Positions 23,289 to 38,862 are shown, counted from the stretch's first letter. The stretch is 64,000 nucleotides of DNA from IMGVR_UViG_3300042465_005589:62001-126000; one strand, 5' to 3'. Numbers and translations: made by a program. The notes: a model not told the origin generated them from the sequence alone.

Positions 23289-23290
23289 TT

Positions 23291-23780: not shown

Positions 23781-23853
23781 TGTCCCCAAGAGGATTCGAA
23801 CCCCTATCGTATCTGCCGTAAAGATAAGTCCTATCCAATTGAACGATGGAGAC
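23781..23853 (-). tRNA. tRNA-Arg (ACG)
   Basis: TT-ACG-GC loop. Confidence 0.85.
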
Positions 23854-24252: not shown

Positions 24253-24302
24253 AATCTTGAGTCTGTTGTTTAGCAGACCTCAAAGATTATCCAATACCTT
24301 TT

Positions 24303-24560: not shown

Positions 24561-24574
24561 AACACATAATTTAG

Positions 24575-24647
24575 GGTGACTAAGGAGAATCGAACTCCCA
24601 TTTACAGAACCACAATCTATCGTGTTAACCGTTACACTATAGCCACC
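24575..24647 (-). tRNA. tRNA-His (GTG)
   Basis: TT-GTG-GT loop, G-1/C73. Confidence 0.88.
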
Positions 24648-24653
24648 ATATTT

Positions 24654-24759
24654 AAACCTATCAATGTGGGTTTGAGATGTACCCTTTTCAATCCGCTTTC
24701 ACACCCATCACCCCTTCTTAAGTAGGAGCTGTCAGTATCGGATACCACATTTAAGGTTT
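24654..24759 (-). ncRNA. Orphan structured RNA, ~105 nt
   Basis: Interrupted closing stem AAACCT/AGGTTT plus AATGTGG/CCACATT. Confidence 0.4.
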
Positions 24760-24761
24760 TG

Positions 24762-24833
24762 TACTCTTGGAAGGAATTGAACCTTCTTTTCATTCTTATC
24801 AGGAATGTGTGCTAACCATTCTACTACAAGAGC
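24762..24833 (-). tRNA. tRNA-Ile (GAT), second copy
   Basis: CT-GAT-AA loop. Confidence 0.8.
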
Positions 24834-24910
24834 AATTTTACCCCACTTCACCGGCTTAACGGACCGGCTGCCATATGGGAGTGGGGGTTTCCTGTTGTAT
24901 CAGGACTCCG

Positions 24911-24982
24911 CGGACTTGGGGAATCACGATATCCCGACCCTTCGCTTAACAGGCGAACGCTCTTCCTCTGAGCTACAAGTCC
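24911..24982 (-). tRNA. tRNA-Asn (GTT), atypical T-loop
   Basis: CT-GTT-AA loop, G73. Confidence 0.75.
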
Positions 24983-25131
24983 AATTTTGACTACTACCTG
25001 ACTCCTTTCGAACTTTGCAGGCTCGTATCATTCAATAATAGTAGTCCAAGGCGTTACGCACCCATCTGATAACTTTACTTCTCTTGAGTCCGGATAAGCG
25101 CTTACCAACTCGGGGGTTGTTTCCTTGTTTG

Positions 25132-25204
25132 TGGGGACTACCGGTTACGCTCCGGTCTCCTTGATTCTTCAGACCAATGCTTTCACTAGATTAGCTTAAT
25201 CCCC
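25132..25204 (-). tRNA. tRNA-Phe (GAA)
   Basis: CT-GAA-GA loop; T-loop AGCGTAA. Confidence 0.78.
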
Positions 25205-25361
25205 AATTATAATAATGATGGAGTACCCGTCTCGCTCCATTCTTAAGTGCTTAATCGTAGTTTTACGAGGCCCTCGGCACATTCCCTTTTCAGGGGGGTG
25301 ATGATTTCTTGAACCCATATTGAATTGTCGACATCCAATATAGAGAAACCCATTATCATAG

Positions 25362-25442
25362 TGGGCAGTAGTGGACTCGAACCACTCCAGTTAAGACTTG
25401 ATTTACAGTCAAGTTGCCGTATCCGAACGACTTTTACTACCC
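25362..25442 (-). tRNA. tRNA-Tyr (GTA)
   Basis: CT-GTA-AA loop, variable arm. Confidence 0.85.
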
Positions 25443-25487
25443 AATTACACTTCCTTTCCTATGTGGTATAGTGTGAACCAATATTAG

Positions 25488-25558
25488 TACCTCGTGGTGG
25501 AATCGAACCACCGCCATTTGTATGTAAAACAAATACGCTCCCATTACGCCAACGAGGC
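25488..25558 (-). tRNA. tRNA-Val (TAC)
   Basis: TT-TAC-AT loop. Confidence 0.82.
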
Positions 25559-25742
25559 TGAGTCCCACTTTACTATTGCAATAGTTGATGAGGTAGTGAG
25601 ACACCTTTATCATCATTCTGTACCGAGTAATGGTGTTGAGCCATTCTAAAGTCAGATATGAGCCGTCTTTGGTCCCGGACCACTCGGCAGTTGTGGTGGA
25701 CATAGGCTCATCACCTATTCTTGGGTTTCCACCGAACCCTTG

Positions 25743-25814
25743 TTATCCCTAATGGAATCGAACCACTTCCGCGTAGACCAAAACTACGTGTACTAACCGT
25801 TATACGAAGGGACA
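25743..25814 (-). tRNA. tRNA-Gln (TTG)
   Basis: TT-TTG-GT loop, U1-A72. Confidence 0.82.
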
Positions 25815-25914
25815 AAATATTTTTTAGTTAATGAACGGTTACCACAATTACGTTCGCCCCGGACTGCTCCGGACATTCTTTTTTGGGTGTGGATTAAACT
25901 ATTTAACTAACCCG

Positions 25915-25996
25915 CGGAGGAGACAGGATTCGAACCTGCAACCCATTACGAGCGACGGTTTTCAAGACCGCTCGACAACCAACTGTCCACTCCTCC
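25915..25996 (-). tRNA. tRNA-Ser (TGA)
   Basis: CT-TGA-AA loop, variable arm, G73. Confidence 0.87.
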
Positions 25997-26045
25997 ATTT
26001 TTCTTACCAATATTTCAAATAACTAATTCCTTTATTTTGATGGGA

Positions 26046-26076
26046 CAAAGGTAATCCTTTTTTTCTAACTTCCAAA
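26046..26076 (-). promoter_or_regulatory. Bacteroidota-type promoter at the head of the tRNA array
   Basis: TTTG..TACCTTTG. Confidence 0.75.
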
Positions 26077-26365
26077 CTTTTAACCAAAAAAAAATCCTGA
26101 ACTTTTTGAGTTCAGGATTTTGGTTATATTTTATGTTTAACTTTATCTATATTGTAGTTAAATCATCGAATAAATCATCTGAACTTGTATGCGAAATACG
26201 CGGATACGAACAATTACTAAACTGTTGGTTCCAAATCGAGACATTCATATGTTTATTACTATTTTTCATTTTTCTTTTTTTTGTGGTATTTCTACCTTGT
26301 TCTTTATAACTATTACAAACTTACGAAAAGTTTATCAAAAGTCAAATATTTTTTTATTTTTTTTA

Positions 26366-26632
26366 TTATATCAATTTGTTCGCAATCTCAATTATTCTAC
26401 TTTCGTCCTCATTGGATAGTAAATGCTTAGAATTTCTAATTTTCATCATTAATTCATCCCACTCTAACTCCATTACTGTCGCCCCTTCTTTTTTTGGTTT
26501 AACTCTCCCATTGAATGAATCTAAATGACCATCCTCAATAAGGCTTTCAATTAAATCGTCAATATCTCTTTTTGAACACGCCGATATATATTCGTAAGGC
26601 TCAATATCAATTTCTGTACTAAAATCTGGCAT
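26366..26632 (-). CDS. Hypothetical protein
   Basis: 88-aa ORF. Confidence 0.7.
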   Translation of the reverse strand: MPDFSTEIDIEPYEYISACSKRDIDDLIESLIEDGHLDSFNGRVKPKKEGATVMELEWDELMMKIRNSKHLLSNEDESRIIEIANKLI

Positions 26633-26635
26633 AAT

Positions 26636-26899
26636 TTATAAATTTTCTAAATAATTAATTAATTCGGTTACTTCTTCTTTTGAATTCCATCCTGAAACAT
26701 CATTACCATCGGGCATTGGCACAAATTTATCAAGAGTTTTATAAAACGCAGCAACTTCAAAGGAAGTCGTTCCATTTCCATATAAATGTTTTCCCCCAAC
26801 AACGGAAACTTCAATATCATTTCCTAAATCTAATTTTGCTTGAACAGCTCCATTACCCATTGAGTGGGGTTTAAATACTAAATCATCAAATGTTTTCAT
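26636..26899 (-). CDS. Hypothetical phage protein (start reassigned to MKTF)
   Basis: The tracked N-terminus MYYFCP is the translated promoter. Confidence 0.7.
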   Translation of the reverse strand: MKTFDDLVFKPHSMGNGAVQAKLDLGNDIEVSVVGGKHLYGNGTTSFEVAAFYKTLDKFVPMPDGNDVSGWNSKEEVTELINYLENL

Positions 26900-26929
26900 A
26901 GGACAAAAGTAATACAAATAATTTAATTA

Positions 26930-28078
26930 TCAAAAATAAAACCCACCTTTTTTTCTTTTAACATTAAAAGACTCTTCAATTTGTTTTCTTTGGTTAACCA
27001 TCGAGTCTTTTTTAAGTTCTGTTAATTGATTTCTATAGTTTGGTACTAGTTCTCTAAGAGGTTTTTCGTCTTTTTTAGATGGTATAAAAATTCCTTTGGT
27101 TTGTAAAACTTGGTTAATAACATTATAATCAACATTATCTGTGGGTTCATTTTTATTCATCAAACTATTAATTAAATTAATATTTTTTGTTTTATCAACT
27201 ACACTGTTAGGAGGATTAATTATCCTTGAATCAACTATTACAGGTTTTTTAGATAATGTTATTTTTTTACTAGTTAATTTATCCAATAATAATTGACTTT
27301 CTTTTGGTTTACCATAATTAGGAGTATAAGTAATCCCATCTTCATTTACTATTGTAATATTTTCATATTTAGGTAATTTGTAAACATATCCAGCAATTTT
27401 ACTTTGTAGAGTTTTATCCCCAAATGAGTTTGTATTTGAATATGATTGATTTTCATGCCATGTGTAGATATACGTTACTTGGTCCAAATAATAGAAATGA
27501 GAATTTCCCGCCATTTCTAACATTGGTATTCCTGCACCAATATCACAACCCGCTTTAAAATATTCTCCCTCAAATTTTAAATCTTCATCTTTAATCATTC
27601 TAAATAAAAATGCTCGATAGGTTCTCATGTGTGAGAAATTCCACGATTTAATTCTTGCTTTATCAGCATTAAATTTACCATAATTCCCTACAACACCGTC
27701 TTTATCCATCCATTTTGAACCACAAATCCATATATTTTCATTTGTATATATTTTAGTAATTAATCCTAAAACAAAATTATCACTTAATTGGTCATCACCA
27801 TCAATTTCAATAATAACATCATCCCAATCTATATTTGGATTATTATTAATAACATCAATAAAATTTTTGGTTTTATATTTTTTCTCAATATTTTTTATTA
27901 AGATAAATCGTTCATCCCCATCGATGGCTTCAAGAGCAACATCGTAAGAATTATCAGTTGACATATCATCAATCATATATACGACAAATTCGCTATAATA
28001 TTGATTTTTTATAGATTTAATACAGTCTGCGACGTATTCTTCGGAATTCCAAAATGTGGATACAATAACTAGTTTCAT
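26930..28078 (-). CDS. Glycosyltransferase family 2
   Basis: VSTFWN..MIDDMSTD..IEIDGDD. Confidence 0.88.
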   Translation of the reverse strand: MKLVIVSTFWNSEEYVADCIKSIKNQYYSEFVVYMIDDMSTDNSYDVALEAIDGDERFILIKNIEKKYKTKNFIDVINNNPNIDWDDVIIEIDGDDQLSDNFVLGLITKIYTNENIWICGSKWMDKDGVVGNYGKFNADKARIKSWNFSHMRTYRAFLFRMIKDEDLKFEGEYFKAGCDIGAGIPMLEMAGNSHFYYLDQVTYIYTWHENQSYSNTNSFGDKTLQSKIAGYVYKLPKYENITIVNEDGITYTPNYGKPKESQLLLDKLTSKKITLSKKPVIVDSRIINPPNSVVDKTKNINLINSLMNKNEPTDNVDYNVINQVLQTKGIFIPSKKDEKPLRELVPNYRNQLTELKKDSMVNQRKQIEESFNVKRKKGGFYF

Positions 28079-28144
28079 AAAAAGAAAGGTTCAATATTTA
28101 TAAATAGACCTAATGTCTTATTTTAATAATAAAAACAAAATAAA

Positions 28145-28714
28145 ATGATTGAGAATACATTTATTAAACCTAAAGGAAGGGTTTTTCATATGATACCCTG
28201 GAATTCTGATAAAAATATTGGTAAATCATATAATGAATTAATGTCAATGGTCAAAACTGATGATTGGGTTTGTTTTTTAGATGGTGATGCTGTTCATACC
28301 TCTCATTTTTTTGGGAAACGGATTGAAGAAGTTATTCAAACTAATCCTGAATATTCATTATTCACTTGTACAACAAATAGAGTTAATTGTCAATATCAAA
28401 TTGCTCCTAATGTCGATATTAAAACAAATGACCAAGAATACCATAGGAATTTTGGAGATTCTCTTTGGGAATTATATGGTAATCAAGTTATGGATGTTAC
28501 ACATAATATGGAATTAAGTGGTGTTTTAATTGTTATAAAAAAATCCATATGGGAAAAAGTTGGTGGTTTTAAAGAAGATAAAATGTTAACTATAGATAAC
28601 GACATTCATAGAAAAATTAGAATTTCCGGTGGATTAGTCGGGTTAATGAAAGGGATATATGTACAACATTGGTATCGTGGTGGTATAAAAGAAAATAGAC
28701 AACACTTACTATAA
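28145..28714 (+). CDS. GT-A fold glycosyltransferase-like protein
   Basis: WVCFLDGD, WEKVGGF, YVQH. Confidence 0.75.
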   Translation: MIENTFIKPKGRVFHMIPWNSDKNIGKSYNELMSMVKTDDWVCFLDGDAVHTSHFFGKRIEEVIQTNPEYSLFTCTTNRVNCQYQIAPNVDIKTNDQEYHRNFGDSLWELYGNQVMDVTHNMELSGVLIVIKKSIWEKVGGFKEDKMLTIDNDIHRKIRISGGLVGLMKGIYVQHWYRGGIKENRQHLL

Positions 28715-29454
28715 TGTATTTAATTCATAAACAAGGGGGTTATTTTAATTCAATTTCAAAAATGGTTGAGGAGGTTTTAGAAGAACCTTGTAGACACACA
28801 TCAAATCCAAATGAAACAGGTGTATGGGTATTATTTTTCACTTCATTTTTATCAGGATTTTATAAATCAATTAAAGGTGATTATATTGTTATTCAAACAG
28901 AACCACCTGAAAGAACTTTCAATAGATATCCGGAATATAAAATAATGTGTGATAACGCAATTAAAGTTTTAGATTACTCTAAGAATTTTGAAATACGTTA
29001 TTCCAATAACTATAGGGTTGATTGTGAAGAATCTAAAGAAATTGACGTTCTTTTCTACGGAGTTTTAAGCCCAAGAAGAAAAGAACTCTTAGATAAAATA
29101 AATGTACCAAATAAAGTTATTCTTCATACATCACCTCCGGTTGCTGGTACTGATTTATGGAAATTAATAAATAAAAGTAAAATTGTATTATTAATCAGTA
29201 CACACGATAGTTCACAAGAACTTGATTGGATTAGACTCACACCTTTATTATCCAATAAAGTTTTTGTTATTATGGAAAAAAATGATGACAAAAAATACGA
29301 TTACTTAAGTAATCATATCGCAATAACAAATTATGATTACATACCAACATTAATTAAACATTTTTTAAAAAACCCATTAGGTAGAGCTCAATGGGCGGAT
29401 AAAGGATTTGACTATATAAGACAACATAAAACAAAAATAATAAACAATGATTAG
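28714..29454 (+). CDS. Glycosyltransferase-like protein (GT-B C-terminal-like)
   Basis: DVLFYGVLSPRR..SKIVLLI..R. Confidence 0.65.
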   Translation: MYLIHKQGGYFNSISKMVEEVLEEPCRHTSNPNETGVWVLFFTSFLSGFYKSIKGDYIVIQTEPPERTFNRYPEYKIMCDNAIKVLDYSKNFEIRYSNNYRVDCEESKEIDVLFYGVLSPRRKELLDKINVPNKVILHTSPPVAGTDLWKLINKSKIVLLISTHDSSQELDWIRLTPLLSNKVFVIMEKNDDKKYDYLSNHIAITNYDYIPTLIKHFLKNPLGRAQWADKGFDYIRQHKTKIINND

Positions 29455-30220
29455 AACTAATTTTTTTACCGCATGTAATGGGATATACAAAGAATTTATA
29501 CCTCTTTTTATATTATCCCATCTATATTATAACGAAAATTGTTTTGTTGAAATAGGTGTTGATACAATGTTAAAACCTGAAATATTAAAAAGTTTACAGG
29601 TACTTAATAATTTTTACCCAAATAAATTTAGCATTCACCTAATAGATTTTGGACCTATTAATGTTAATAGTAAAAAATATAATGCAATACCAAATACGAT
29701 TAGATTTTTTACCACCCCAAAAACTAAAAGTGAATATGTCTATATTTCCGATATAGACATTATTTGTCTTCAAAAAGAATTATCCGATATTCATATTAAT
29801 GATATGATAAGAACAGGTTTACCATATTCAAATATTGTGAGACCAGTCAAAGACGAATCCCATCCTCATCGTAGATTGAGTGGGTTACATTTTACACCAT
29901 ACGATAATTATTATCCATTACCAAATTATGATAATTTATGCCAAACAGGTTTATTACAACATGATGAAGTATTTTTATATGAATTAGTTAAAAAACGTCA
30001 TCCTAATTTTTTAATAGATAATTCATATAGACCTGTTCACGGTATTCACGTATCTCCAAATAGAAATCCAACCGGAACTATGAATTGGGGTATACCTAAA
30101 TGGAGAAATCAATGGGGGGAATTTAGAAATTCTAAAGAATTTAGAGACCTCGAGTTAACTTTAACACAAATGATTAAAGAAAAAATAAATATAATTGATA
30201 ATTACTATACCGATAACTAA
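29447..30220 (+). CDS. Glycosyltransferase-like protein (DxD)
   Basis: YVYISDIDII; position in cluster. Confidence 0.55.
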   Translation: MIRTNFFTACNGIYKEFIPLFILSHLYYNENCFVEIGVDTMLKPEILKSLQVLNNFYPNKFSIHLIDFGPINVNSKKYNAIPNTIRFFTTPKTKSEYVYISDIDIICLQKELSDIHINDMIRTGLPYSNIVRPVKDESHPHRRLSGLHFTPYDNYYPLPNYDNLCQTGLLQHDEVFLYELVKKRHPNFLIDNSYRPVHGIHVSPNRNPTGTMNWGIPKWRNQWGEFRNSKEFRDLELTLTQMIKEKINIIDNYYTDN

Positions 30221-30226
30221 AAAATA

Positions 30227-30931
30227 ATGGAAACTTTTACAAATAAAACACCAAAAATAATTGTTTATAGTGTGAGTACTGGTGGGTACGATGAACTAAA
30301 AACACCAACCGTATACGACCCAAACATTAGATACATTTTATTTACCGATAATAAATATTTTAAATCAGATGTGTGGGAAGTTAATCATGTTGATTTTATT
30401 GATAATAATTTAGATAACAGACGAAAAGCTAGATATATTAAACTAAACCCTCATTTAATTTTACCAACTCACGACATAAGTATTTGGATTGACCATTGTT
30501 ATGTTCCAAGATTTTCTAATGCCGAAGAATTATTAAATGAAATTAAGTTTTTTAACAATGATATTATGTGTTATAAACATGATGTAAGACAGTGCTTATA
30601 TTCAGAATCTGAAGAAGTTAAATCTCAAGGATTAGACTATCCGGACATTGTTAATACTCAAATGAAAAAATATAGAATGGAAGGTTTTCCTCACAATTAC
30701 AATCTATTCGATAGTGGTTTCACCATTAGAAAAAATAATGAAAAAGTTAACGAATTTAATAATATTTGGTGGGATGAAGTTAAAAATTTTAGCGCTAGAG
30801 ACCAATTATCTCAAGTTTATTCTTCATGGAAAACTGATACTCAAATATCCCCAATATCCATTGGTTCATCAATCTACATAAATAAATTTTTAAACCCTAA
30901 AATTAAACACCCTAAAAAATGGTTGATATAA
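30227..30931 (+). CDS. DUF616/TOD1-MUCI70 glycosyltransferase-like protein
   Basis: TGGYD, SIWID, H..R.C.Y.E, RDQLS. Confidence 0.82.
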   Translation: METFTNKTPKIIVYSVSTGGYDELKTPTVYDPNIRYILFTDNKYFKSDVWEVNHVDFIDNNLDNRRKARYIKLNPHLILPTHDISIWIDHCYVPRFSNAEELLNEIKFFNNDIMCYKHDVRQCLYSESEEVKSQGLDYPDIVNTQMKKYRMEGFPHNYNLFDSGFTIRKNNEKVNEFNNIWWDEVKNFSARDQLSQVYSSWKTDTQISPISIGSSIYINKFLNPKIKHPKKWLI

Positions 30932-31503
30932 TTGCTGTAACATACGGACAAAATGAAATATTAAAATGTTTCATTAATTCAATTAAATCTCAAACAAGTA
31001 ATAATTGGAGATTAGTGATTATTCATGACGGTCCAAATCCAACATTACATAACGAACTTAGAAATGAAGGTTATTTAAATTCAGATAAAATTGAATTTAT
31101 TGAGCATCCTGTAAGAACTGAATATTACGGACATTTATTACGTAAATGGTCGTTAGAAAACGTTATTAAGAATGAATATGTCTTACTAACTAATGGAGAT
31201 AATTATTATATGCCAACAATGGTTGATGAGATTAGTAAAAGAACGGAAGATTTAATATACTTTGATTTAATTCATTCACATAAAACACCATTTAATAGTA
31301 ATAATTCGACTTACGGATTAATGAATAGTCAATTAATTAGTTCCAAAGTTGATATGGGTAATGTTGTTATTAAAAGTGAGTTAGCTAAAAAAGTAGGTTT
31401 TAATTCTGTCGCATTTAACGCCGATTGGATTTACTTTAGTGATATAATTAAATTATCACCAAGTATTTTTAAAATTGATAAAGTATTATTCGTACATAAT
31501 TAA
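30919..31503 (+). CDS. Glycosyltransferase family 2
   Basis: IIHDGP, LLTNGDNYY, ADW, VLFVHN. Confidence 0.8.
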   Translation: MVDIIAVTYGQNEILKCFINSIKSQTSNNWRLVIIHDGPNPTLHNELRNEGYLNSDKIEFIEHPVRTEYYGHLLRKWSLENVIKNEYVLLTNGDNYYMPTMVDEISKRTEDLIYFDLIHSHKTPFNSNNSTYGLMNSQLISSKVDMGNVVIKSELAKKVGFNSVAFNADWIYFSDIIKLSPSIFKIDKVLFVHN

Positions 31504-31508
31504 AAAAC

Positions 31509-31534
31509 AAAAAGATGTCTCTCGACATCTTTTT
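31509..31534. terminator. Bidirectional terminator
   Basis: AAAAAGATGTC..GACATCTTTTT. Confidence 0.7.
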
Positions 31535-31602
31535 GCTAGATTTGGAATTTTCCCCTTTCTTTTAGTTGGTTAATCCCATTCGGATTCTACTCCGAAGGTA
31601 CT

Positions 31603-33219
31603 TTAATTAGACATTGCTTTATCTCTAATTTCATCATGAGCGTTATCTAACTTATCAGATAACCCATTTAATAATGGACATAATATTTTTGTGATATTAC
31701 TTTCAAGTTTATTTAAAAAGTCATTATCGTTTACATAATCAAAAATGTTGTCTCTTACCATATCGTATAGACCACCATTCAAATCAGCATCTTTTTTTAA
31801 TTTCCCAGCACTTCCATCAACAATTGATTTTGAAATTGTTTTTGTCAAATAACTACAATCAAGTAATTTTTCAATATCACTAACTTTAATATCATCAAGT
31901 GAATTAATTATTAATTTACTCATCCATCCATCAGAGTGTAATGGTGTTAATTTAGAAACTAACCATTCACCCATATATTCTTTAAATGTGTCAAAAATTG
32001 AATCGTAATCACCCTTGTCAAAAAACCCTTTTAACGTTTCAAAAAATTGTTCTTGGATAATATGTTTACTAAAATTTTGAGAATTTAAATAAATAGATTC
32101 TGTCAATATATCGTTAAACAATCTTTTTTGTTGAGGTTTGGTTTTTAAATATAAAGTCTCTACTATAATAGACGTTCTACCTTTAACAATTTTAGATTCC
32201 GCAGAATATGTTCTTAATTTTTCAGTTTTAACTTTTGTTAAATTTTCCTTAATTAAAGATTTAATTTTTAAATCAGTAGATTCGTTAAGACCAATAATGT
32301 ATGGACTAGGTGCTTTAAGATATTTGGTTTTACCCGCTAAAATTCTAAATACTTGTCTTTTATCAATTTTTTTATTTAAGAATCCGTAAGGAGACAATTT
32401 ACTCTTAACTTCAGCAGTTTCATCTTCTCTAAAACCATCAAAACTATCAAACTGTCCTGAACCATCACATTTAACTAATTGTTGTTTAAACTCTCTTAAT
32501 TGAGGGATTGGTGTTGTTTCAACTCTCGCATTATATTGTAATGCTGCTCCAAGATATTGACCTAATATTGTTCTACAACCTTCAGCATCTAATTTGATAC
32601 CTCCGGCAGCTCCCGCTTGTAAATCTTTAGTTTTACCTTTTGGTAAATAAAGAATTATGTTTTTCCAACCTTTATCTCTATCCAAAGCCGGTACTTGAGT
32701 AAATTGTGTTGTTAAAACATCGCTATCCGGTAACACTTTATCTTCAATATTGGTTAATAATTTAGCCTTTGGATAATCCTTAGATAACAATTCATTCCAT
32801 TGTTTAAAAATGTTTGACACAGCTTCTTTATCAACATAAGTTTGTAAGTTAGCTGTTACATTATCCAATGTTTTTAATAAAGTCACCTCATCCAATTTTG
32901 GGTCAATATTAAATGATGTTAATAAAGGACTTGTTGAATATGATAATGCGTCACATGCCCATTTTTTTTTATTTTTAGTCACCATATTCTGCACAGTCAT
33001 ATCAGCAAAGAATACAACATTCTCACCTTTACTATTTTGACCATACCAAATATCTTGATTATTTAATTTTCCTGGCTTACCATTCTTTAACCATTTAGGA
33101 AAACAACCCGATTTAAAGGCGTTTTGGAATAATAATTGTTCGTTAGTTTGAACTGGTCTAGCCTGTAATTGTTCTTTTATTGTATTTTTCATAATTGGTT
33201 GTTTTTTATACTTCTTCAT
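31603..33219 (-). CDS. Large hypothetical protein, possibly virion-associated
   Basis: 538-aa ORF in leader-bearing operon. Confidence 0.8.
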   Translation of the reverse strand: MKKYKKQPIMKNTIKEQLQARPVQTNEQLLFQNAFKSGCFPKWLKNGKPGKLNNQDIWYGQNSKGENVVFFADMTVQNMVTKNKKKWACDALSYSTSPLLTSFNIDPKLDEVTLLKTLDNVTANLQTYVDKEAVSNIFKQWNELLSKDYPKAKLLTNIEDKVLPDSDVLTTQFTQVPALDRDKGWKNIILYLPKGKTKDLQAGAAGGIKLDAEGCRTILGQYLGAALQYNARVETTPIPQLREFKQQLVKCDGSGQFDSFDGFREDETAEVKSKLSPYGFLNKKIDKRQVFRILAGKTKYLKAPSPYIIGLNESTDLKIKSLIKENLTKVKTEKLRTYSAESKIVKGRTSIIVETLYLKTKPQQKRLFNDILTESIYLNSQNFSKHIIQEQFFETLKGFFDKGDYDSIFDTFKEYMGEWLVSKLTPLHSDGWMSKLIINSLDDIKVSDIEKLLDCSYLTKTISKSIVDGSAGKLKKDADLNGGLYDMVRDNIFDYVNDNDFLNKLESNITKILCPLLNGLSDKLDNAHDEIRDKAMSN

Positions 33220-34009
33220 CGTCTGATATGGTACTTTGAATTTGTCCTTGTACCTGTGTATTAGAATCTGTTATTCCATCATTTTGTTGTTTAGGAGTTT
33301 CACCTCCTTGAACACCAGGTAATGTTTTAGGTAGATTTTGTGCGTCTTTAAGTTTTTGAGCAAAAAATTCTTTATATTTTTCAGCATTATCTGTCGGTGG
33401 AGTTGAGTTTTGTGGTGTTGTTGGTTCTACCGGTGTATCACCCTTCGGATTTTTATCAAACAACGCTTTTATAGAATCAATACCTTTTTGAGCTTTAGCT
33501 TCAACCCAATTTGGATATTTAGTTGCGAATTTACCACCCGACTTACCTTTAAAATAATATTTTCCGTTTTCTAATTTGTAATCATAAGATTTATCATTTT
33601 TAGTAATTAAAACCGATGTTGGTGGTGTCGTTCCTGCTGCCGGTGGCGTTGTTCCTGCTGCCGGTGGTGTAGTCCCTGATGCTGTAGTCCCTGCTGCTGT
33701 AGTTGTTCCTGCTGCCGGTGGTGTTGTTCCTGCTGATGTAGTCCCTGCTGCTGTAGTTGTTCCTGCTGCCGGTGGTGTTGTTCCTGCTACAGCCGCTTGT
33801 GCGTTTTTCAACATATCAGCCGGAGATGTTGGGGTATACTTAATACCAGCGTCTTGAGCCGAACCTGTATTAGATGTGAAATTAAATTTTTTATCACCAA
33901 CAGTTTGTTCAACAATGTTTTCAGATAAAGTCTTTTTAGGGTCGTAATTAAATAAAAGAGCCGCTTTTTGTAGCTCTTCAGAAATTAAATTATTTATATT
34001 ATTTTTCAT
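33206..34009 (-). CDS. Leader-bearing protein with (PP)AAGTT repeats
   Basis: LISEE..LSENIVEQ leader; T/P/A-rich linker. Confidence 0.8.
   Translation of the reverse strand: MKNNINNLISEELQKAALLFNYDPKKTLSENIVEQTVGDKKFNFTSNTGSAQDAGIKYTPTSPADMLKNAQAAVAGTTPPAAGTTTAAGTTSAGTTPPAAGTTTAAGTTASGTTPPAAGTTPPAAGTTPPTSVLITKNDKSYDYKLENGKYYFKGKSGGKFATKYPNWVEAKAQKGIDSIKALFDKNPKGDTPVEPTTPQNSTPPTDNAEKYKEFFAQKLKDAQNLPKTLPGVQGGETPKQQNDGITDSNTQVQGQIQSTISDDEEV
33620..33790 (-). repeat. Coding tandem repeats (AAGTT / PPAAGTT)
   Basis: Repeated GTTCCTGCTGC(CGGTGG) units of 15-21 bp. Confidence 0.9.
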
Positions 34010-34020
34010 ATATTTTTTTT

Positions 34021-35241
34021 TTAAAGTTCAATATCGTCACCCACATTAGGGTCTAAATCGTCTTGTTTTATTTGAGTAACTTTACTCCACCCTTTAGATG
34101 ATGTATATTGACCACCATCTTCGGTATTAATTACCATTTGATTACCATCACATTTCCAAGTCCCATTTAAAATAGTTCCATCTTCAAACTCATAGATAAA
34201 TTTTAAATTTTTATAAAAATTCAACGAATCTTTACCACTTGTTGATTTAAAAGATATTTTATTAGTTTGTGTTGTAGGTATATTCTTTCCAAAACCGTTA
34301 AAACAAGAATAATCATTTGTCCAAGTAGGTTTAGAAGATTCTGTTGTTGATGGTGCTGGTGGTGGAATCACCGGTGTTGATTGACCACATTCTTTTTTAG
34401 CATTAGGGAATCTTTTATCCAAGTCTCTAATTGCGTTAGGAAGATTTTTTAATGATTTCCAATCAGTAATTGATTTACCTTTTGTTTCCCATTCACAGTC
34501 ATTTGATAATCTATATTGATAAGGGTCTCCTGGTGTTGTATATATTTTTTTATCACTAGTTGATGTACTTGAGGATGATAATGAACCTAAATTACTTTTT
34601 CCGGTATTATCCCACCCAAATTGTTTGGTATATTCATAACCATCTTCTGTTTTTATATATAATTTACCTGAAACACATTTCCATTTTCCATTTAATATAG
34701 CTTTAACTTCATTTTCATAAACAAATTTTCCGTCTTTATAAAAATATAAATTATCTTCACCATCTTGAGTTTTAACAACAACTTTATCATCACTATCACT
34801 TCTATTAATATTACCTATCTCGTTAATGCAAGGGTTATCTTTTACCCAATCAGGTAAAGTTGTCATGTCTTCCCACCAATTAGATAAACGGTCTCTAATA
34901 TCACGATACCATACATTACCTTCTTTCCATACTTTTTTACCGGCATCTTTCAATTTCTCAAGAAGAGCTGCGTCCGTAACCTTTTCCCAAAATATTCTTT
35001 CAATATCAGAAACGTTTGGAATTGGGTCCGGAGTTGGAGGTGCAGGTGTCGGAGGTGCAGGTGTCGGTGGAGATGGCGTTGGAGGAGCTGGTGTTGGTGT
35101 TGTAATTTTAGGTTTATACCATTTACCATCACTACTAACATCATATTTAGACTTATCTATCTTACCAATTAAGGGTGGTGGAACTGCAGTCCAATCACCA
35201 CTATTGTCAGGTTGTTCTAATATAAGGGAATTTCTTTTCAT
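34021..35241 (-). CDS. Leader-bearing protein with Pro-rich repeats and a duplicated ~70-aa module
   Basis: PTPAPP repeats; two FYK..KF.YE..NG.WKC..TEDG..Y...GW modules. Confidence 0.8.
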   Translation of the reverse strand: MKRNSLILEQPDNSGDWTAVPPPLIGKIDKSKYDVSSDGKWYKPKITTPTPAPPTPSPPTPAPPTPAPPTPDPIPNVSDIERIFWEKVTDAALLEKLKDAGKKVWKEGNVWYRDIRDRLSNWWEDMTTLPDWVKDNPCINEIGNINRSDSDDKVVVKTQDGEDNLYFYKDGKFVYENEVKAILNGKWKCVSGKLYIKTEDGYEYTKQFGWDNTGKSNLGSLSSSSTSTSDKKIYTTPGDPYQYRLSNDCEWETKGKSITDWKSLKNLPNAIRDLDKRFPNAKKECGQSTPVIPPPAPSTTESSKPTWTNDYSCFNGFGKNIPTTQTNKISFKSTSGKDSLNFYKNLKFIYEFEDGTILNGTWKCDGNQMVINTEDGGQYTSSKGWSKVTQIKQDDLDPNVGDDIEL

Positions 35242-35264
35242 ATTACATAAATATCAATAAAATA

Positions 35265-37160
35265 TTAATTACCTTTAGAGTAAGGAATAAATTTTTTACC
35301 ATCCTTATCCCAATACCAAGTATCAAATCCAGTACTAGAATCAATTTCATTTGTTTGAGCTGAAACTCCATCATATTCTTTTTTAACGGTAAAACCATAT
35401 TCTTTCATTTTAAGATTAAATAATCCTTTTAAACCAGCATCCGTTGTATCATCAATTACTTCTTCAGATTTCTTTTTCGCTTCTTCCGTTGTCTTTTCAA
35501 CCTCAACTTTAACATCGGTTTGCATACAATTAAAAATAATATTAATATTTTCTTCTCTTGATTTAGTTTTATCATAACATTTCAATTTAGATAACTCCTC
35601 ATCTGTTAATTTAGACAACGCCTCAATAAATTCTTTTTTACCTTTATTTAAAATACCTTCACCCGCTTTAACATCAAATTTAGAATTCATCCAATCATAA
35701 ATGTCTAAACCTAGTAAATGAGCCGGATTTAAATCTATTCTAGTTATTGGGAAGTCATCTGGAAAAGGTAAATGAACATCAAAATAAGTGTCAGTTTTTT
35801 TCCAATTATTATATCTTTCAACAAAATTTTTCCAATATAACTCAAAAATATTTTTAGTATCAGTGTCATTTCCATAACCAAAAATATTAAACCATTGAAA
35901 TAATGTTTGAAAAGTAAGGATGGTTGCGGGTAACCCTACGTGTGTAGCAACCCATAAATCTCGAACCAAGTCTTTTAATCCTGGTACTCCTCGTTTAAAA
36001 TATGACGCCCATTCATCAATACTTTTTGGTGCTCCCACAGTTAATAAACTAACCGTTCTTTCTAATAAAACTGGAATTTTATTTTTCATAAATTTAGGCA
36101 TTACTGAACTAGCCAAATCTTTTAACGCGTTTGCCGATGAAGTATTATCCAAAAAATAAGTAAGAGAACCCCATCTTCCTGATTCAAAAGGATTATGACT
36201 TTTAACTTGAGTTAAAACTTCACTAACTTCAGTACTATTATTAGGGTATCTCTTTTTTAAATATTTTTCCATTGTAGAATAAAAAGCCTCTTGTCCTGTT
36301 TTATATTTTTGAATTAGAACATCCATGTTAGTTCTAATATTACGAAACAAATTATCATCAATAGCCTCACCTCGTTTAAGTTGGTCAATTGATTGTGATA
36401 AAGCTTCATCAAATTTATTAAATAAATCTTGAGCAAATTTTTCATCACCTATTTTCCATAATCTAGCTTTATTCACATAATTATCTAATGCCGCACGAGT
36501 AAAGTCAATAAGAGTTTTATCACTAGATAATATATTTTCCCACCATTTAAGTGTTTTTGGAGATAAATCTTTTAATGATTCTCTATACAGAACTGAACTT
36601 ATTCCAATGCCTTCTTCACCTAAATCAGACACGACTTCGGTAACAAATTTATCTTGTTTAAGGTCTCTAATTTTTTGAGCAATTTTTTGAATTAAAACTT
36701 CATTTAAAAATACATCTTCTTCTCCATTAAGGTCTGTTAACACATCTCCGATTTTTTTATTACCTTTTGCTTGATTTGAGATAAATTCTATTAAACCTTT
36801 TTCACTTTTATTTGTTGATAACATAGCTTCACTCATTAATAGTTCGTAAATATCGTCAACAATACCTTGATTTTGACTAACTATTTGACCAAATATTTCT
36901 TTTTCTGCTTTACTTAAAGTATCATATAATGATGTGTTATCTAATACATCCATAATTTTTCTTAACACTCCTTTGTTAACTCTAATTGAATCAACCATTA
37001 CCTCATCAACGACATTATCAATTACCTTTTGACTTTTATTAAAAAAACTTTTTATTAAATCACTACCTATTTCAACATACTTATTTTCTTTTAATATTTT
37101 TGCATCAACACCCATAAGTTGTTGTTGACGATAAATCTCATATATAATTTTTTTATTCAT
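35265..37160 (-). CDS. Large helical protein with hydrophobic segment
   Basis: 631-aa ORF; QQLMG..ILKE leader. Confidence 0.8.
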   Translation of the reverse strand: MNKKIIYEIYRQQQLMGVDAKILKENKYVEIGSDLIKSFFNKSQKVIDNVVDEVMVDSIRVNKGVLRKIMDVLDNTSLYDTLSKAEKEIFGQIVSQNQGIVDDIYELLMSEAMLSTNKSEKGLIEFISNQAKGNKKIGDVLTDLNGEEDVFLNEVLIQKIAQKIRDLKQDKFVTEVVSDLGEEGIGISSVLYRESLKDLSPKTLKWWENILSSDKTLIDFTRAALDNYVNKARLWKIGDEKFAQDLFNKFDEALSQSIDQLKRGEAIDDNLFRNIRTNMDVLIQKYKTGQEAFYSTMEKYLKKRYPNNSTEVSEVLTQVKSHNPFESGRWGSLTYFLDNTSSANALKDLASSVMPKFMKNKIPVLLERTVSLLTVGAPKSIDEWASYFKRGVPGLKDLVRDLWVATHVGLPATILTFQTLFQWFNIFGYGNDTDTKNIFELYWKNFVERYNNWKKTDTYFDVHLPFPDDFPITRIDLNPAHLLGLDIYDWMNSKFDVKAGEGILNKGKKEFIEALSKLTDEELSKLKCYDKTKSREENINIIFNCMQTDVKVEVEKTTEEAKKKSEEVIDDTTDAGLKGLFNLKMKEYGFTVKKEYDGVSAQTNEIDSSTGFDTWYWDKDGKKFIPYSKGN

Positions 37161-37185
37161 AACTTATTATTTTAATATAAATACA

Positions 37186-38862
37186 TTATCTTTTAATCTT
37201 AAACCAATTAACCCCATTTACTTGAGTATAATCATAAACCGTATTTTCATTTTTTAATTCTGATTCAGGAATAAATCCTTCTTTTCTTAATTTTTTTTCA
37301 TCCTCAAGACTACCTTTTTTATTATCCACCGCTTTATTCTCATCCTCCGGTAATTCGGTATAAACACCTCCCGCTTCTTGAATACTATCTTTCATTACTG
37401 TGTTATAATATTTTCCCCAAGATTTTCCTTTTTTATTTAATTTTGTAAATGTTTCAATTTTTTTAACTGATTCGGTCTGTGGTAATTTTTTTAATACTTC
37501 CGCGTCATTAGACAATAAATTAAACGCCATTTCTTTTTGAAGTTCTTCAGGAATATTTATATAAACACCTTTTAATTTTTCTAAATCTTCTGAATTAAGA
37601 ACATCTCCCCACGCAGCATTTACCAAAATACCCAATAAAATAAAAAACGCATTTGTACTTAATTCTCTAGCCCAAAGTTTATTAAAAAAAGAAATACTTT
37701 TTAATAATTCAGGTTTAGATTTAACCATATTCTTAAGTTCTTTTATTATAATTTTAGGTAAATCATCCGAAACCGCAGTTTTCAATTCTTTTAATAATAA
37801 ATTTTTTGTTACTTCATCTTGAGTTAATAATTTTGACATAACTAATTGTTCAGATTCAGATAAACCATTATAAAATTTAACATAATCTTCAACATTACTT
37901 GATTTAGTCAATCCTGCTTTTGATAATTTTTCAGATAATTCAGTGAAAACCCCTTCAGGTATTCCTCTAAACATTTTTGAAAGTTTTAACATTGGTAAAG
38001 CCCCTGTAATAAATGATAATGCCGCTGAAACATTTTCACCTTTTTCAAGCTCTCTAAAACCAACCGCCGCACCTAAACCAGCTTCAAGTGCTATTTCCGC
38101 ATATAAAACCCATGCGGCACCACCCGTTAACATACCGGCAATTGCCGTTCCTAATGCAGCAGCTATTTGAATTGCAAAACCATAGTCGTCAACAAACCTT
38201 TGATAATCACTACGTTTATCAACCCATTCAGGTGGAGTATAAGGTTCTTTTGTTTTTAAATTTCTATAATAACCAAATCTCCAAAGATTAGTTCCTTCTG
38301 TTTTAATTACATAACCAATATAAACTTCATCACCAATGGAGAATTGCCTTACAGAACCTATCGGAAATACTTTACTAAGATTACTAATTAATAGTTTTTT
38401 ATCTTCTTTAGGGTGTTTTTTAACAAATTTATTAACAGTGTCACTAATTCCTTCTATATCCCAAAAATAAATTTTACTATCTTCCGGTATTGGGACACTA
38501 TTAATGTCACCCATTTTTTGATTTGAAGGTGAAGGGTAATAACAAAACCTTTTTCCGGTTTCTTTGTCGACAAGAATAGCGTCTTCACCTTCAACCCCTT
38601 CAGGATTTTTAGGGATTCCTAATGCTTTATCGGGATATTTACACCAATTAGGGTATTTTTTAGATTTTTCTTCAGCACTTCGTTGTAAAATTTGTTGTTC
38701 CCCTCTTGCTAATATTTCTTTTGTTTGAGGATTTTCAAATCTACTATCAGGTTGTTCAAATATATATTGAGTATTTTCATTTAAAGTTTTGGACATATCA
38801 TACCCCATCAATAGTTTAACTCTATTAACAAGTAATTCACCCTCATTTAATTTATTGTCCAT
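37186..38862 (-). CDS. Large protein with Gly/Ala-rich TM segments
   Basis: 558-aa ORF; LLMGY..TLNE..IFEQ leader. Confidence 0.8.
   Translation of the reverse strand: MDNKLNEGELLVNRVKLLMGYDMSKTLNENTQYIFEQPDSRFENPQTKEILARGEQQILQRSAEEKSKKYPNWCKYPDKALGIPKNPEGVEGEDAILVDKETGKRFCYYPSPSNQKMGDINSVPIPEDSKIYFWDIEGISDTVNKFVKKHPKEDKKLLISNLSKVFPIGSVRQFSIGDEVYIGYVIKTEGTNLWRFGYYRNLKTKEPYTPPEWVDKRSDYQRFVDDYGFAIQIAAALGTAIAGMLTGGAAWVLYAEIALEAGLGAAVGFRELEKGENVSAALSFITGALPMLKLSKMFRGIPEGVFTELSEKLSKAGLTKSSNVEDYVKFYNGLSESEQLVMSKLLTQDEVTKNLLLKELKTAVSDDLPKIIIKELKNMVKSKPELLKSISFFNKLWARELSTNAFFILLGILVNAAWGDVLNSEDLEKLKGVYINIPEELQKEMAFNLLSNDAEVLKKLPQTESVKKIETFTKLNKKGKSWGKYYNTVMKDSIQEAGGVYTELPEDENKAVDNKKGSLEDEKKLRKEGFIPESELKNENTVYDYTQVNGVNWFKIKR

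What the first reader, a model, noticed from the sequence alone, without database searches (positions are those of the whole stretch)
26930..35241. Six glycosyltransferase-like genes abut Thr/Pro-rich repeat proteins
Seen: the GT cluster (26930-31503) is next to proteins with AAGTT/PPAAGTT and PTPAPP repeats. Known: T/P-rich linkers are typical O-glycosylation targets and some phages glycosylate their virions. Inference: virion glycan shielding; alternatives are DNA or host-surface modification.
Basis: inference. Interest (0 to 1): 0.6.

Follow-up and report, generated by a model that had tools for sequence, protein, structure and literature searches.

The report
Swappable sugar-enzyme island in lake jumbo phage
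A 318-kb lake-water jumbo phage carries a block of six soluble sugar-adding enzymes in a genome slot where related phages swap or lose such enzymes; the Thr/Pro-rich repeat proteins nearby are real, but nothing found here ties them to the enzymes.

Summary
Window 26930-31503 encodes six soluble glycosyltransferase (GT)-like proteins. Two pass Pfam cut-offs, two rest on PHROG or sub-threshold profile hits, one is shown by a confident GT-A model, and one is weak. Genes at 33206-34009 and 34021-35241 carry true tandem AAGTT(PP) and PTPAPP repeats.

The window belongs to a freshwater jumbo myophage (318,164 bp, about 31% GC, 23 tRNAs, DnaK), probably with a Bacteroidota host.

Comparing 30 related loci shows that the slot beside the 538-aa gene is a glycan-island hot spot. 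A core of three or four GTs is kept. Middle cassettes are exchanged for a GT-D-like enzyme, a GT2, a pyruvyl transferase or methyltransferases. In some lineages other islands fill the slot (RgpF and rhamnosyltransferase genes, or a methyltransferase-GT2 fusion). In nine loci the slot is empty.

Long Ser/Thr-rich tracts beside the island occur in only one sub-clade. Deeper lineages keep the island without them.

T/S/P-rich tracts occur in 15 proteins genome-wide, including the tail sheath and a collagen-like fibre. At least 13 GT genes lie in four loci, and their closeness to T/P-rich genes is no better than chance (P about 0.2).

DNA glycosylation is disfavoured: the only ThyA is canonical and there is no TET. 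The acceptor is unknown. Glycosylation of phage proteins is my leading guess, followed by remodelling of host envelope glycans.

The parts
26366..26917 (-). Two small ORFs (88 and 93 aa) that mark the far border of the island slot
   Evidence: Found directly after the island, or directly after the 538-type gene where the slot is empty, in 25 or more related loci.
26930..28078 (-). GT2-family glycosyltransferase (382 aa; GT-A domain 1-150 plus a basic C-terminal extension); core island gene
   Evidence: PF00535 55.6 bits. No TM segment. Orthologues 48-84% identical in all own-type islands.
28095..28106 (.). 12-bp palindrome TATTTATAAATA in the 66-nt divergent spacer; putative bidirectional promoter or operator of the island
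   Evidence: Invariant in 11 related islands although the flanks diverge. Nine copies in the genome, all 8-58 nt upstream of gene starts, against about 1 expected.
28145..28714 (+). Small GT-A-like glycosyltransferase (189 aa); core island gene
   Evidence: phrog_14179 E 1.4e-27; Pfam GT2 22.2 bits. 68-91% identical orthologues.
28714..29454 (+). Probable GT-B-type half-size glycosyltransferase (246 aa); variable cassette gene
   Evidence: Glyco_trans_1_2 E 1.6e-3; Atlas features 0.97. Replaced in type-B islands.
29447..30220 (+). GT8/GT24-like retaining GT-A glycosyltransferase (257 aa) with a DxD motif; variable cassette gene
   Evidence: AF2 pLDDT 95.3; Foldseek probability 1.0 to Gat1, UGGT, LgtC, glycogenin and GlyE. 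Best viral match is a Tupanvirus protein, TM 0.69. 167 homologues, some fused to a polysaccharide deacetylase or a methyltransferase.
30227..30931 (+). TOD1/MUCI70 (DUF616)-type glycosyltransferase-like protein (234 aa); core island gene
   Evidence: PF04765 51.6 bits; phrog_26101 E 1e-31. Homologues in Cellulophaga siphoviruses and Synechococcus phage S-SCSM1.
30919..31503 (+). Small GT2-like glycosyltransferase (194 aa); near-core gene (missing in L039)
   Evidence: PF00535 22.0 bits; NCBIfam EpsE 5e-5. Paralogue at G001 18773-19333.
31506..31537 (.). 14-bp-stem hairpin between the convergent island and neighbour genes; terminator-like
   Evidence: sequence read.
31603..33219 (-). 538-aa conserved protein of unknown function; the constant neighbour of the slot; no repeats
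   Evidence: Homologues at 30-86% identity in all 30 loci, fused into 939-1073-aa proteins where the slot is empty.
33206..34009 (-). 267-aa protein: conserved N-terminal YD..KTLSEN box, 58-aa AAGTT(PP) tract (DNA repeat 33621-33788), small domain, acidic C-terminus
   Evidence: Orthologues are 193-290 aa with different or no repeats; the same phage in another sample has one extra 18-aa unit (L026).
34021..35241 (-). 406-aa 'beads on a string' protein: PTPAPP linker (DNA repeat 35033-35097), two small beta domains with conserved Cys, Ser- and Thr-rich linkers
   Evidence: Alignment of 28 homologues: domains 70% or more conserved, linkers hypervariable. AF2 shows linkers 48-71, 214-229 and 287-302 disordered. 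Beta domains are weakly lipocalin/avidin-like, Z about 6.
35265..37160 (-). 631-aa module protein with the N-terminal box; C-terminal half fast-evolving
37186..38862 (-). 558-aa module protein with the N-terminal box and two hydrophobic Gly/Ala-rich segments
   Evidence: 87 metagenomic homologues, none annotated. Hydropathy. Box present in 57 of 86 homologues as the strict pattern, the rest as a variant.

Best explanation
The block 26930-31503 is a phage-borne glycan-assembly island. Shown: it holds six soluble (no TM) Leloir-type glycosyltransferases of at least four kinds: GT2-like GT-A, GT8/GT24-like retaining GT-A, TOD1/MUCI70-like, and a probable GT-B half. They are read divergently from a spacer holding a conserved palindrome and end at a hairpin. 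The island occupies a fixed slot of a freshwater jumbo-myophage lineage. There a core (GT2, the 189-aa GT, TOD1, and often the 194-aa GT) is kept, while middle cassettes are exchanged, the whole island is replaced, or it is lost. Inferred: the enzymes use host nucleotide sugars, because the phage has no clear sugar-nucleotide genes, and act in sequence in the cytoplasm to build a strain-variable hetero-oligosaccharide that other lineages methylate or pyruvylate. The cassette turnover suggests that something outside the cell 'sees' the glycan. The acceptor is not identified. My most likely reading is O-glycosylation of the phage's own proteins on Ser/Thr-rich tracts. Such tracts occur in 15 proteins, including the tail sheath, a collagen-like fibre and the two neighbours. 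On this reading the island enzymes extend a glycan started by another enzyme, possibly the GT60-like gene elsewhere in the genome. The neighbours are not dedicated partners of the island.
For: GT identities. No TM segments. Hairpin. Palindrome. Hot spot and cassette exchange across 30 loci. No NTP_transferase and only a sub-threshold epimerase hit. At least 13 GT genes in four loci, including PF11397 (GT60-like, E 9e-72), GT47 and a bifunctional GT2. S/T/P tracts in the sheath (phrog_23 1.6e-54), the collagen-like fibre (PF01391 1.7e-33), a SprB-repeat protein and a 642-aa protein with an 83-aa PT tract beside the GT60-like gene. Structural neighbours of the 257-aa GT include enzymes that extend protein-linked glycans (Gat1, GlyE, UGGT, glycogenin) and giant-virus GTs. 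The type-B island has a GT-D-like gene, a fold I know only from Ser-rich-adhesin glycosylation. Long S/T tracts beside the slot occur only in island-bearing loci, 5-6 of 11 against 0 of 8. Precedent: mycobacteriophage virion glycosylation (Freeman 2023, cited in PMC12619734).
Against: There is no direct evidence for any acceptor. GT-to-T/P adjacency is at chance level. Island-bearing deep lineages lack the tracts. The 5-6 tract-bearing loci form one clade, so they amount to about one evolutionary event. The island is not next to capsid or tail genes; its neighbourhood holds tRNAs, RNA ligase, DnaK and an endolysin. RgpF, rhamnosyltransferase, pyruvyl-transferase and EpsE/TuaG/NodC-like hits are typical of lipid-linked polysaccharide pathways. 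The GT60-like gene lies near the DNA polymerase here and in phage XacN1, where no PT-rich protein is nearby. PT and GTS tracts may be plain flexible linkers or collagen-like repeats.
Confidence: 0.45

Rival explanations
1. Remodelling of host envelope glycans. The soluble GTs act at the inner face of the host membrane on undecaprenyl-linked intermediates of a surface polysaccharide, or of the Bacteroidota general O-glycan. This changes the infected cell's surface, for example to block superinfection or to stop progeny sticking to debris.
For: Best NCBIfam neighbours of the GT2 genes are EPS, teichuronic acid, NodC and PglI enzymes. Alternative islands in the same slot carry RgpF, a rhamnosyltransferase, a polysaccharide pyruvyl transferase and methyltransferases. 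ORF4 homologues are sometimes fused to a polysaccharide deacetylase. Cyanophage GT clusters are usually read this way (PMC12801897). Cassette turnover resembles O-antigen loci.
Against: The phage has no flippase, polymerase, initiating phosphoglycosyl transferase or exporter in or beside the island. It shows no lysogeny genes near the island, although L043 has an integrase 6 kb away. A lytic jumbo phage has little time for surface turnover.
Confidence: 0.25
2. The adjacent 267-aa and 406-aa proteins are the dedicated acceptors, are virion-surface components, and their glycosylated T/P tracts shield the virion.
For: Proximity of 1.7-2.5 kb. Long tracts occur only where an island is present, and the 267-type gene exists only in island-bearing genomes. 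Repeat copy number varies between samples of the same phage (L026), as expected for an exposed, selected tract.
Against: L038 has the same island but no tract. Deep island-bearing lineages have no tract. Repeat type does not track island type. The units are convergent and separated by a terminator. The neighbours show no homology to virion proteins. Their shared N-terminal box ending in hydrophobic-x-Glu, together with a T4-type prohead protease in the genome, would fit internal head or ejected proteins better than surface ones.
Confidence: 0.15
3. DNA hypermodification. The GTs add sugars to modified bases to evade restriction.
For: This is a known function of phage GTs, including multi-sugar chains (Pyle 2024, cited in PMC12619734). 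One related cyanophage cluster has a gene annotated as DNA beta-glucosyltransferase. The Cellulophaga phage homologue of the TOD1 gene lies next to a DNA methyltransferase.
Against: The only ThyA-family gene keeps the Asn of dUMP-specific thymidylate synthase. There is no Tet/JBP. None of the six matches the T4 alpha/beta-GT families. Pyruvyl transferase and RgpF cassettes in sister islands do not fit base-linked sugars.
Confidence: 0.07

Closest known systems
Multi-GT clusters of large aquatic phages (Synechococcus phages S-SCSM1 / S-SCSM2R, Prochlorococcus P-SSM2) and the GT orthogroups of 'moraphages'
   Same: Many small soluble GTs in a row in a jumbo or large myophage of aquatic bacteria. 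There is direct homology of the TOD1-type gene to S-SCSM1 (31% identity) and structural similarity of ORF4 to an S-SCSM1 GT. The function is unknown in the literature too (PMC12801897, PMC12619734). The moraphage description (freshwater, about 300 kb, Bacteroidota host, DnaK) fits this genome.
   Different: No nucleotide-sugar epimerases or 2OG oxygenases accompany the GTs here. The fixed-slot hot spot with cassette exchange, and the conserved palindrome, are shown here; I did not find them described in the two papers I read. Membership in the moraphage lineage was not tested.
Mycobacteriophage virion glycosylation (Che8/Corndog type; Freeman et al. 2023)
   Same: Phage-encoded soluble GTs, with O-glycans on Ser/Thr-rich unstructured segments of phage proteins.
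   Different: There the GT genes sit beside the capsid and tail-tube genes and the acceptors are C-terminal extensions of those proteins. Here the island lies among non-structural genes and the neighbours are uncharacterised. No sequence relationship was tested, and no glycans have been demonstrated.
Giant-virus glycan gene clusters (Mimivirus fibril polysaccharides, chlorovirus capsid glycans)
   Same: A dozen or so virus-encoded cytoplasmic GTs. Sister islands hold methyl- and pyruvyl-transferases, and collagen-like and Thr-rich structural proteins are present. ORF4's best viral structural match is a Tupanvirus protein (TM 0.69). GT content varies by clade.
   Different: This is a tailed phage, not a nucleocytovirus, and it has no sugar-nucleotide biosynthesis genes.
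Bacterial O-antigen / capsule loci and Ser-rich-repeat adhesin glycosylation islands
   Same: A fixed chromosomal slot with conserved flanks and exchangeable GT cassettes. GT-D-like, GT8 and GT2 enzymes act in sequence on Ser-rich repeats in the adhesin systems.
   Different: There is no Wzx/Wzy/ABC exporter, no initiating transferase, no GtfA/B pair and no accessory Sec system.

Membership tests
GT2 (Pfam PF00535, GT-A inverting) | Profile score above the curated cut-off | tested here: met
   The 382-aa protein scores 55.6 bits against 23.3. The 189-aa and 194-aa proteins score 22.2 and 22.0 bits, just below, so those two are 'GT2-like' only.
GT2 (Pfam PF00535, GT-A inverting) | Acidic DxD-type metal/nucleotide-sugar motif after beta-4 | tested here: met
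   The 382-aa protein reads ...MIDDMSTD... and ...EIDGDDQ.... This was read from the sequence; no structure was made.
GT8 / GT24-type retaining GT-A | GT-A Rossmann-like fold with conserved DxD | tested here: met
   ORF4 model pLDDT 95.3. Foldseek probability 1.0, TM 0.40-0.55 to 6mw5, 5y7f, 3tzt, 1ss9 and 3t7m. D102 and D104 are invariant.
GT8 / GT24-type retaining GT-A | Sequence-profile membership (PF01501 or PF18404) | tested here: not met
   No Pfam, NCBIfam or PHROG hit for ORF4. It is therefore filed as 'GT8-like fold', not as a member.
TOD1/MUCI70 (PF04765) | Profile score above the cut-off | tested here: met
   51.6 bits against 21.4, covering profile positions 128-290 of 314.
GT-B (Glyco_trans_1_2, PF13524) | Profile score above the cut-off | tested here: not met
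   The 246-aa protein scores 18.9 bits against 25. Only a language-model similarity supports it.
Actinobacteriophage-type virion glycosylation system | GT genes embedded in or next to the capsid and tail-tube genes whose products are the acceptors | tested here: not met
   Portal, terminase and prohead protease lie at G001 43-50 kb, and sheath and baseplate at 250-285 kb. The island is at 89-93.5 kb among tRNA, RNA-ligase and DnaK genes.
Actinobacteriophage-type virion glycosylation system | Glycans detected on virion proteins | not testable with these tools
   This needs virions or co-expression plus mass spectrometry.
Phage DNA glycosylation (hmC/hmU-sugar) | dCMP/dUMP hydroxymethylase or TET/JBP oxygenase that creates the hydroxymethyl acceptor | tested here: not met
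   There is a single ThyA homologue with PCH and PFNIASY motifs, that is Asn and not Asp. PF12851 is absent.
Seroconverting Gtr-type or O-antigen/capsule locus | Membrane components (GtrA flippase, GtrC, Wzx/Wzy or ABC exporter, initiating phosphoglycosyl transferase) | tested here: not met
   None of the six proteins has a hydrophobic segment, and no such Pfam family appears in the island or its flanks.
T4-type capsid-targeted internal proteins (considered for the neighbouring module) | Short N-terminal leader ending in hydrophobic-x-Glu, plus a gp21-type (S77) prohead protease in the genome | tested here: inconclusive
   The protease is present (PF03420, E 1.5e-24). Conserved leaders end in ..TLSE/N..ILE/QP or ..IFE/QP. 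Such tripeptides are common by chance, and cleavage and packaging are untested.
Moraphages (PMC12619734) | Placement in the marker-gene phylogeny or AAI with the 25 described genomes | not tested
   Only descriptive agreement: freshwater, about 300 kb, DnaK, likely Bacteroidota host, several GT orthogroups.

The most novel reading that the evidence does not exclude
This lineage of lake jumbo phages makes mucin-like, O-glycosylated virions. A GT60-like polypeptide GlcNAc-transferase primes Thr in (PT)n, poly-Thr, (GTS)n and AAGTT tracts of the sheath, the fibres and the module proteins. The exchangeable island then extends the glycan into strain-specific 'glycotypes', a viral counterpart of bacterial O-antigen serotypes. 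These could govern host recognition, grazing or defence evasion.
Probability: 0.18. Interest if true: 0.8.

Novelty: new variant of a known kind. Interest (0 to 1): 0.5.

Why it matters
Clusters of glycosyltransferases are common in large aquatic phages, and the papers read here leave their role open. This locus offers a clean comparative handle on that question. It has a fixed slot, a conserved promoter-like palindrome, a stable core and interchangeable cassettes. The phage is abundant in many lake metagenomes, and its sheath and fibres carry Thr/Ser-rich tracts. If the glycan ends up on virions, this would extend virion glycosylation from actinobacteriophages to jumbo phages of Bacteroidota, and it would show glycan 'serotypes' in phages. 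If the glycan ends up on the host envelope, it would be a case of surface remodelling by a phage with no sign of lysogeny near the island. Either outcome can be tested by co-expression and mass spectrometry.

Tried and rejected
- tblastn of the 558-aa and 406-aa proteins against 50,697 phage records found no match, so no proteomics-backed homologue exists.
- Foldseek with the whole 406-aa model gave only beta-propeller noise (TM about 0.12). VIA-align gave weak lipocalin/avidin/OspA-like matches (Z 6.5 or less), within the tool's background. No function was drawn from either.
- Prolyl hydroxylation of the PTPAPP tract, a Skp1-like pathway, was considered. No 2OG-FeII_Oxy_3 gene is present, so the idea was dropped.
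- A T4-style late promoter (TATAAATA) was considered as evidence for late, structural timing. The motif is really a 12-bp palindrome that also precedes the DNA-polymerase operon, so no timing inference was made.
- ClpP was considered as the maturation protease because it sits beside the module in L004. In this genome it is 34 kb away, so this was not pursued.
- GT-to-T/P proximity was tested as a genome-wide signal. The permutation gave P about 0.2, so it was rejected as evidence.
- Co-variation of repeat type with island type was looked for and not found.
- Read laying on four lake metagenomes was used to look for repeat-length alleles. It returned assembled contigs only. These break at the repeat and show a second allele of the 538-aa gene, but no indel call.
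- No RNA run holds the region, so expression is untested.
- The large representative-protein search and the complex predictor were not used; nothing in the claim rests on them.


Full report
**What the window is.** The 64-kb window is bases 62208-126207 of a 156.6-kb IMG/VR virus record. That record is 99.975% identical to the first half of a 318,164-bp record, G001, which CheckV rates complete. G001 coordinate = window coordinate + 62000. The genome is 31% GC.

It encodes a portal, a large terminase, a T4-type prohead protease, a tail sheath and a baseplate wedge. It also carries 23 tRNAs in the window, a DnaK 66% identical to those of megaphages, an RNA ligase and an endolysin.

The region is found almost word for word in 24 lake-water metagenome runs. 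The description of 'moraphages' fits well: freshwater jumbo phages of about 300 kb with DnaK, Bacteroidota hosts and several GT orthogroups of unknown role (PMC12619734). I did not test membership of that lineage.

**The observation.** Six ORFs fill 26930-31503.
- One lies on the minus strand: a 382-aa GT2, 55.6 bits against a cut-off of 23.3.
- Five lie on the plus strand.
  - 189 aa: phrog_14179 GT, E 1.4e-27.
  - 246 aa: only a weak GT-B-type hit.
  - 257 aa: no profile hit.
  - 234 aa: TOD1/MUCI70, 51.6 bits against 21.4.
  - 194 aa: GT2 just under the cut-off.

For the 257-aa protein I collected 167 homologues. A 44-sequence alignment has invariant D102 and D104, and the model has pLDDT 95.3. 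It is a GT-A fold. The best solved matches are the Skp1 alpha-galactosyltransferase Gat1, the UGGT catalytic domain, a GT8 protein, LgtC, glycogenin and GlyE. The best viral match is a Tupanvirus protein.

So five of the six are well supported and one is weak. None has a transmembrane segment.

The repeats are true tandem repeats. AAGTT(PP) fills 58 residues of the 267-aa protein, and PTPAPP fills about 25 residues of the 406-aa protein. The gene that actually touches the cluster, the 538-aa protein, has no repeat.

**Anatomy of the island.** The minus-strand GT2 and the five plus-strand genes diverge from a 66-nt spacer. The spacer contains the palindrome TATTTATAAATA at 28095-28106. This 12-mer is invariant in eleven related islands although the rest of the spacer has diverged. 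It occurs nine times in the genome, always 8-58 nt upstream of a gene start, where about one copy is expected. It is therefore very probably a promoter or operator.

The same element also precedes the head/packaging operon and the DNA-polymerase operon, so it says nothing about timing. The plus-strand operon ends at a 14-bp-stem hairpin (31506-31537), which it shares with the convergent 538-aa gene. The island is 27.0% GC, against 30.4% for the neighbouring module.

**Comparative genomics.** I compared 30 loci from metagenomes and IMG/VR that contain a homologue of the 538-aa or 558-aa protein. The interval between the 538-type gene and a pair of small ORFs (88 and 93 aa here) takes one of three states.
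- **Own-type island.** The core is the GT2, the 189-aa GT, TOD1 and usually the 194-aa GT.
  - The middle varies: the 246+257-aa pair as here; a GT2 plus a GT-D-like gene (non-homologous replacement); the 257-aa gene alone; a polysaccharide pyruvyl transferase plus the 257-aa gene; or an added SAM methyltransferase.
- **A different island.** One form has an HNH endonuclease with RgpF, a rhamnosyltransferase, Glyco_tranf_2_5 and a double GT2. Another has an FkbM-methyltransferase-GT2 fusion.
- **Empty slot.** This occurs in nine loci. There the 406-type and 538-type parts are fused in one 939-1073-aa gene and no 267-type gene exists.

The island core is 48-80% identical even where the 538-type neighbour has dropped to 30%. 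The island is therefore old, was lost repeatedly, and its content turns over. This pattern resembles O-antigen or capsule loci. It argues that the product is a variable glycan exposed to selection.

**Is the island tied to the T/P repeats?** Long tracts (25 residues or more) made only of S/T/P/G/A occur beside the slot in 5-6 of 11 island-bearing loci and in 0 of 8 empty-slot loci. However, all tract-bearing loci belong to one close clade.

L038 has the same six GTs and a 193-aa orthologue with almost no repeat. The five deep island-bearing lineages have none. Repeat chemistry (AAGTTPP, SGTTSGAT, SGSAGT, ATAAP) does not follow island type. A distant island-less relative has a long SGT repeat in a module protein.

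Within the 406-aa family the folded domains are 70% or more conserved, while the linkers vary freely in length and composition. They are disordered in the model.

Genome-wide, 15 of 426 ORFs have a 25-residue window with at least 60% T+S+P, and GT genes lie in four loci. A permutation shows that GT genes are no closer to T/P-rich genes than chance (P about 0.2). Adjacency is therefore not evidence of a functional link.

**What the neighbours are.** The five minus-strand genes (558, 631, 406, 267 and 538 aa) have no Pfam, PHROG or NCBIfam family and no relative in cultured phages.

Three of them share an N-terminal box with module proteins of far relatives (...LLMxYDxxKTLxEN...). It is found in only 5 of 426 proteins of the genome. 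The 406-aa and 558-aa proteins share ...I-L/F-E-Q-P-D just after it.

The 558-aa protein has two Gly/Ala-rich hydrophobic segments. The 406-aa protein is a string of small beta domains with conserved Cys pairs. One homologue from a bacterial-labelled record has a signal peptide.

The genome has a T4-type prohead protease, whose relatives cut after hydrophobic-x-Glu (established knowledge for T4 gp21). The leaders could therefore be capsid-targeting and cleavage signals, which would make these internal or ejected proteins. That is inference only. It would speak against a role as shielded surface proteins.

**The wider genome.** At least 13 GT-like genes exist.
- The island holds six.
- A second locus at G001 17-29 kb holds a Glyco_tranf_2_5+GT2 fusion, a GT2-like paralogue, a GT47/exostosin-like gene, a weak GT1 and a GT2.
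- A lone GT2 lies at 170 kb.
- A PF11397 (GT60-like) enzyme lies at 300213-301460, E 9e-72.

PF11397 is the family of cytoplasmic polypeptide and hydroxyproline GlcNAc-transferases (my knowledge of Pfam and CAZy). Directly beside the G001 gene lies a 642-aa protein with an 83-residue PT tract and C-terminal Asp-box repeats.

The same enzyme occurs at 46-49% identity in the jumbo phages XacN1, Xoo-sp13, CM1 and RAS14. In XacN1, as here, it lies near the DNA polymerase, and in XacN1 no PT-rich gene is nearby.

The tail sheath carries poly-Thr/Ser inserts, a giant collagen-like (GTS)n protein spans the contig ends, and a SprB-repeat protein has PT linkers. The phage has no NTP-transferase and only a sub-threshold epimerase hit, so it must use host nucleotide sugars.

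**Weighing the acceptors.**
- **DNA.** The single ThyA homologue has the Asn of true thymidylate synthases. No Tet/JBP is present. Pyruvyl and RgpF cassettes do not suit base-linked sugars. This reading is unlikely (about 0.07).
- **Host envelope.** Several family resemblances point to lipid-linked polysaccharide chemistry. No membrane or export component is phage-encoded. This reading is plausible (about 0.25).
- **Phage proteins.** In favour are many soluble GTs, a GT60-like candidate initiator, GT8-like and GT-D-like elongating types, Thr/Ser-rich tracts on bona fide virion proteins, and the giant-virus and mycobacteriophage precedents. This is my leading reading (about 0.45 including the neighbours as possible but not special acceptors).

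**Verdict.** The genes are glycosyltransferases and protein glycosylation remains a live hypothesis, but the adjacency that prompted it carries no weight. What is really there is an exchangeable glycan-assembly island in a conserved hot spot of a freshwater jumbo-phage lineage. It is a new variant of a known kind (phage GT clusters) and of moderate interest. It would become high interest if virion 'glycotypes' were demonstrated.

Noticed in passing
window 28095-28106, 9987-9998, 44549-44560 (and six more sites in G001): The 12-bp palindrome TATTTATAAATA occurs nine times in the 318-kb genome. Every copy lies 8-58 nt upstream of a gene start, against about one copy expected. It precedes the GT island, the head/packaging operon and the DNA-polymerase operon, so it is probably a phage promoter or operator.
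   Followed up: partly
window 3121-25996: An array of 23 tRNA genes lies on the minus strand, interspersed with small ORFs, an HNH endonuclease, an N6/N4 methyltransferase and an ABC_membrane_3 protein. Two tRNAs are unusually long (Thr 91 nt, Pro 94 nt), and tRNA-Pro(TGG) is present three times.
   Followed up: no
window 33206-38862; L042:12833-13705; L043:13657-14925: A conserved N-terminal box (..LLMxYDxxKTLxEN.., often followed by I-x-E-Q-P) is shared by otherwise unrelated module proteins across the lineage. The genome also has a T4-type prohead protease (G001 43231-43650). This may be a capsid-targeting or cleavage signal.
   Followed up: partly
G001 300213-303528 (outside the window; L022:213-3528): A PF11397 (GT60-like, polypeptide/hydroxyproline GlcNAc-transferase family) gene lies directly beside a 642-aa protein with an 83-residue PT tract and C-terminal Asp-box (SxDxGxTW) repeats. 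The GT is 46-49% identical to genes of the jumbo phages XacN1, Xoo-sp13, CM1 and RAS14.
   Followed up: partly
G001 17265-28630 (outside the window; L007/L008): A second glycan locus holds a bifunctional Glyco_tranf_2_5+GT2, a GT2-like paralogue of the 194-aa gene, an exostosin/GT47-like gene, a xylose-isomerase-like TIM barrel, a weak GT1 and a GT2.
   Followed up: partly
G001 312217-318164 and 1-2800; G001 281741-285067: A giant collagen-like (Gly-Thr-Ser)n protein appears to run across the contig ends, where the DNA is tandemly repeated. The 1108-aa tail sheath has poly-Thr/Ser inserts around residues 288-317.
   Followed up: partly
window 50682-52550, 55661-56458, 57012-57824, 7886-8911, 9235-9975: Other genes in the window: DnaK (66% identical to megaphage DnaK), an endolysin (PG_binding_1 + GH19), a 270-aa class-II aminoacyl-tRNA-synthetase-like fragment, a T4 Rnl1-type RNA ligase, and a GIY-YIG/HTH homing-endonuclease-like gene.
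   Followed up: no
L003:1488-4024, L031:1199-3738: In relatives the IMPDH gene is split into two pieces. A gene between them has a weak NUMOD3 hit and one IMPDH piece has a weak Hint (intein-like) hit. In L038 the IMPDH gene is intact.
   Followed up: no
window 31550-35300 in runs X14, X16, X20, X24: Lake metagenome contigs break at the AAGTT repeat (about 33712/33759) in all four runs. A second allele of the 538-aa gene, with 30 differences in 303 nt at 32183-32485, co-occurs in three runs, so several strains coexist.
   Followed up: partly
P0140 (homologue of window 34021-35241): A 345-aa protein from an NCBI-sourced record has a signal-peptide-like N-terminus and the same two small Cys-containing beta domains as the 406-aa phage protein. 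This hints that the domain works outside the cytoplasm.
   Followed up: no
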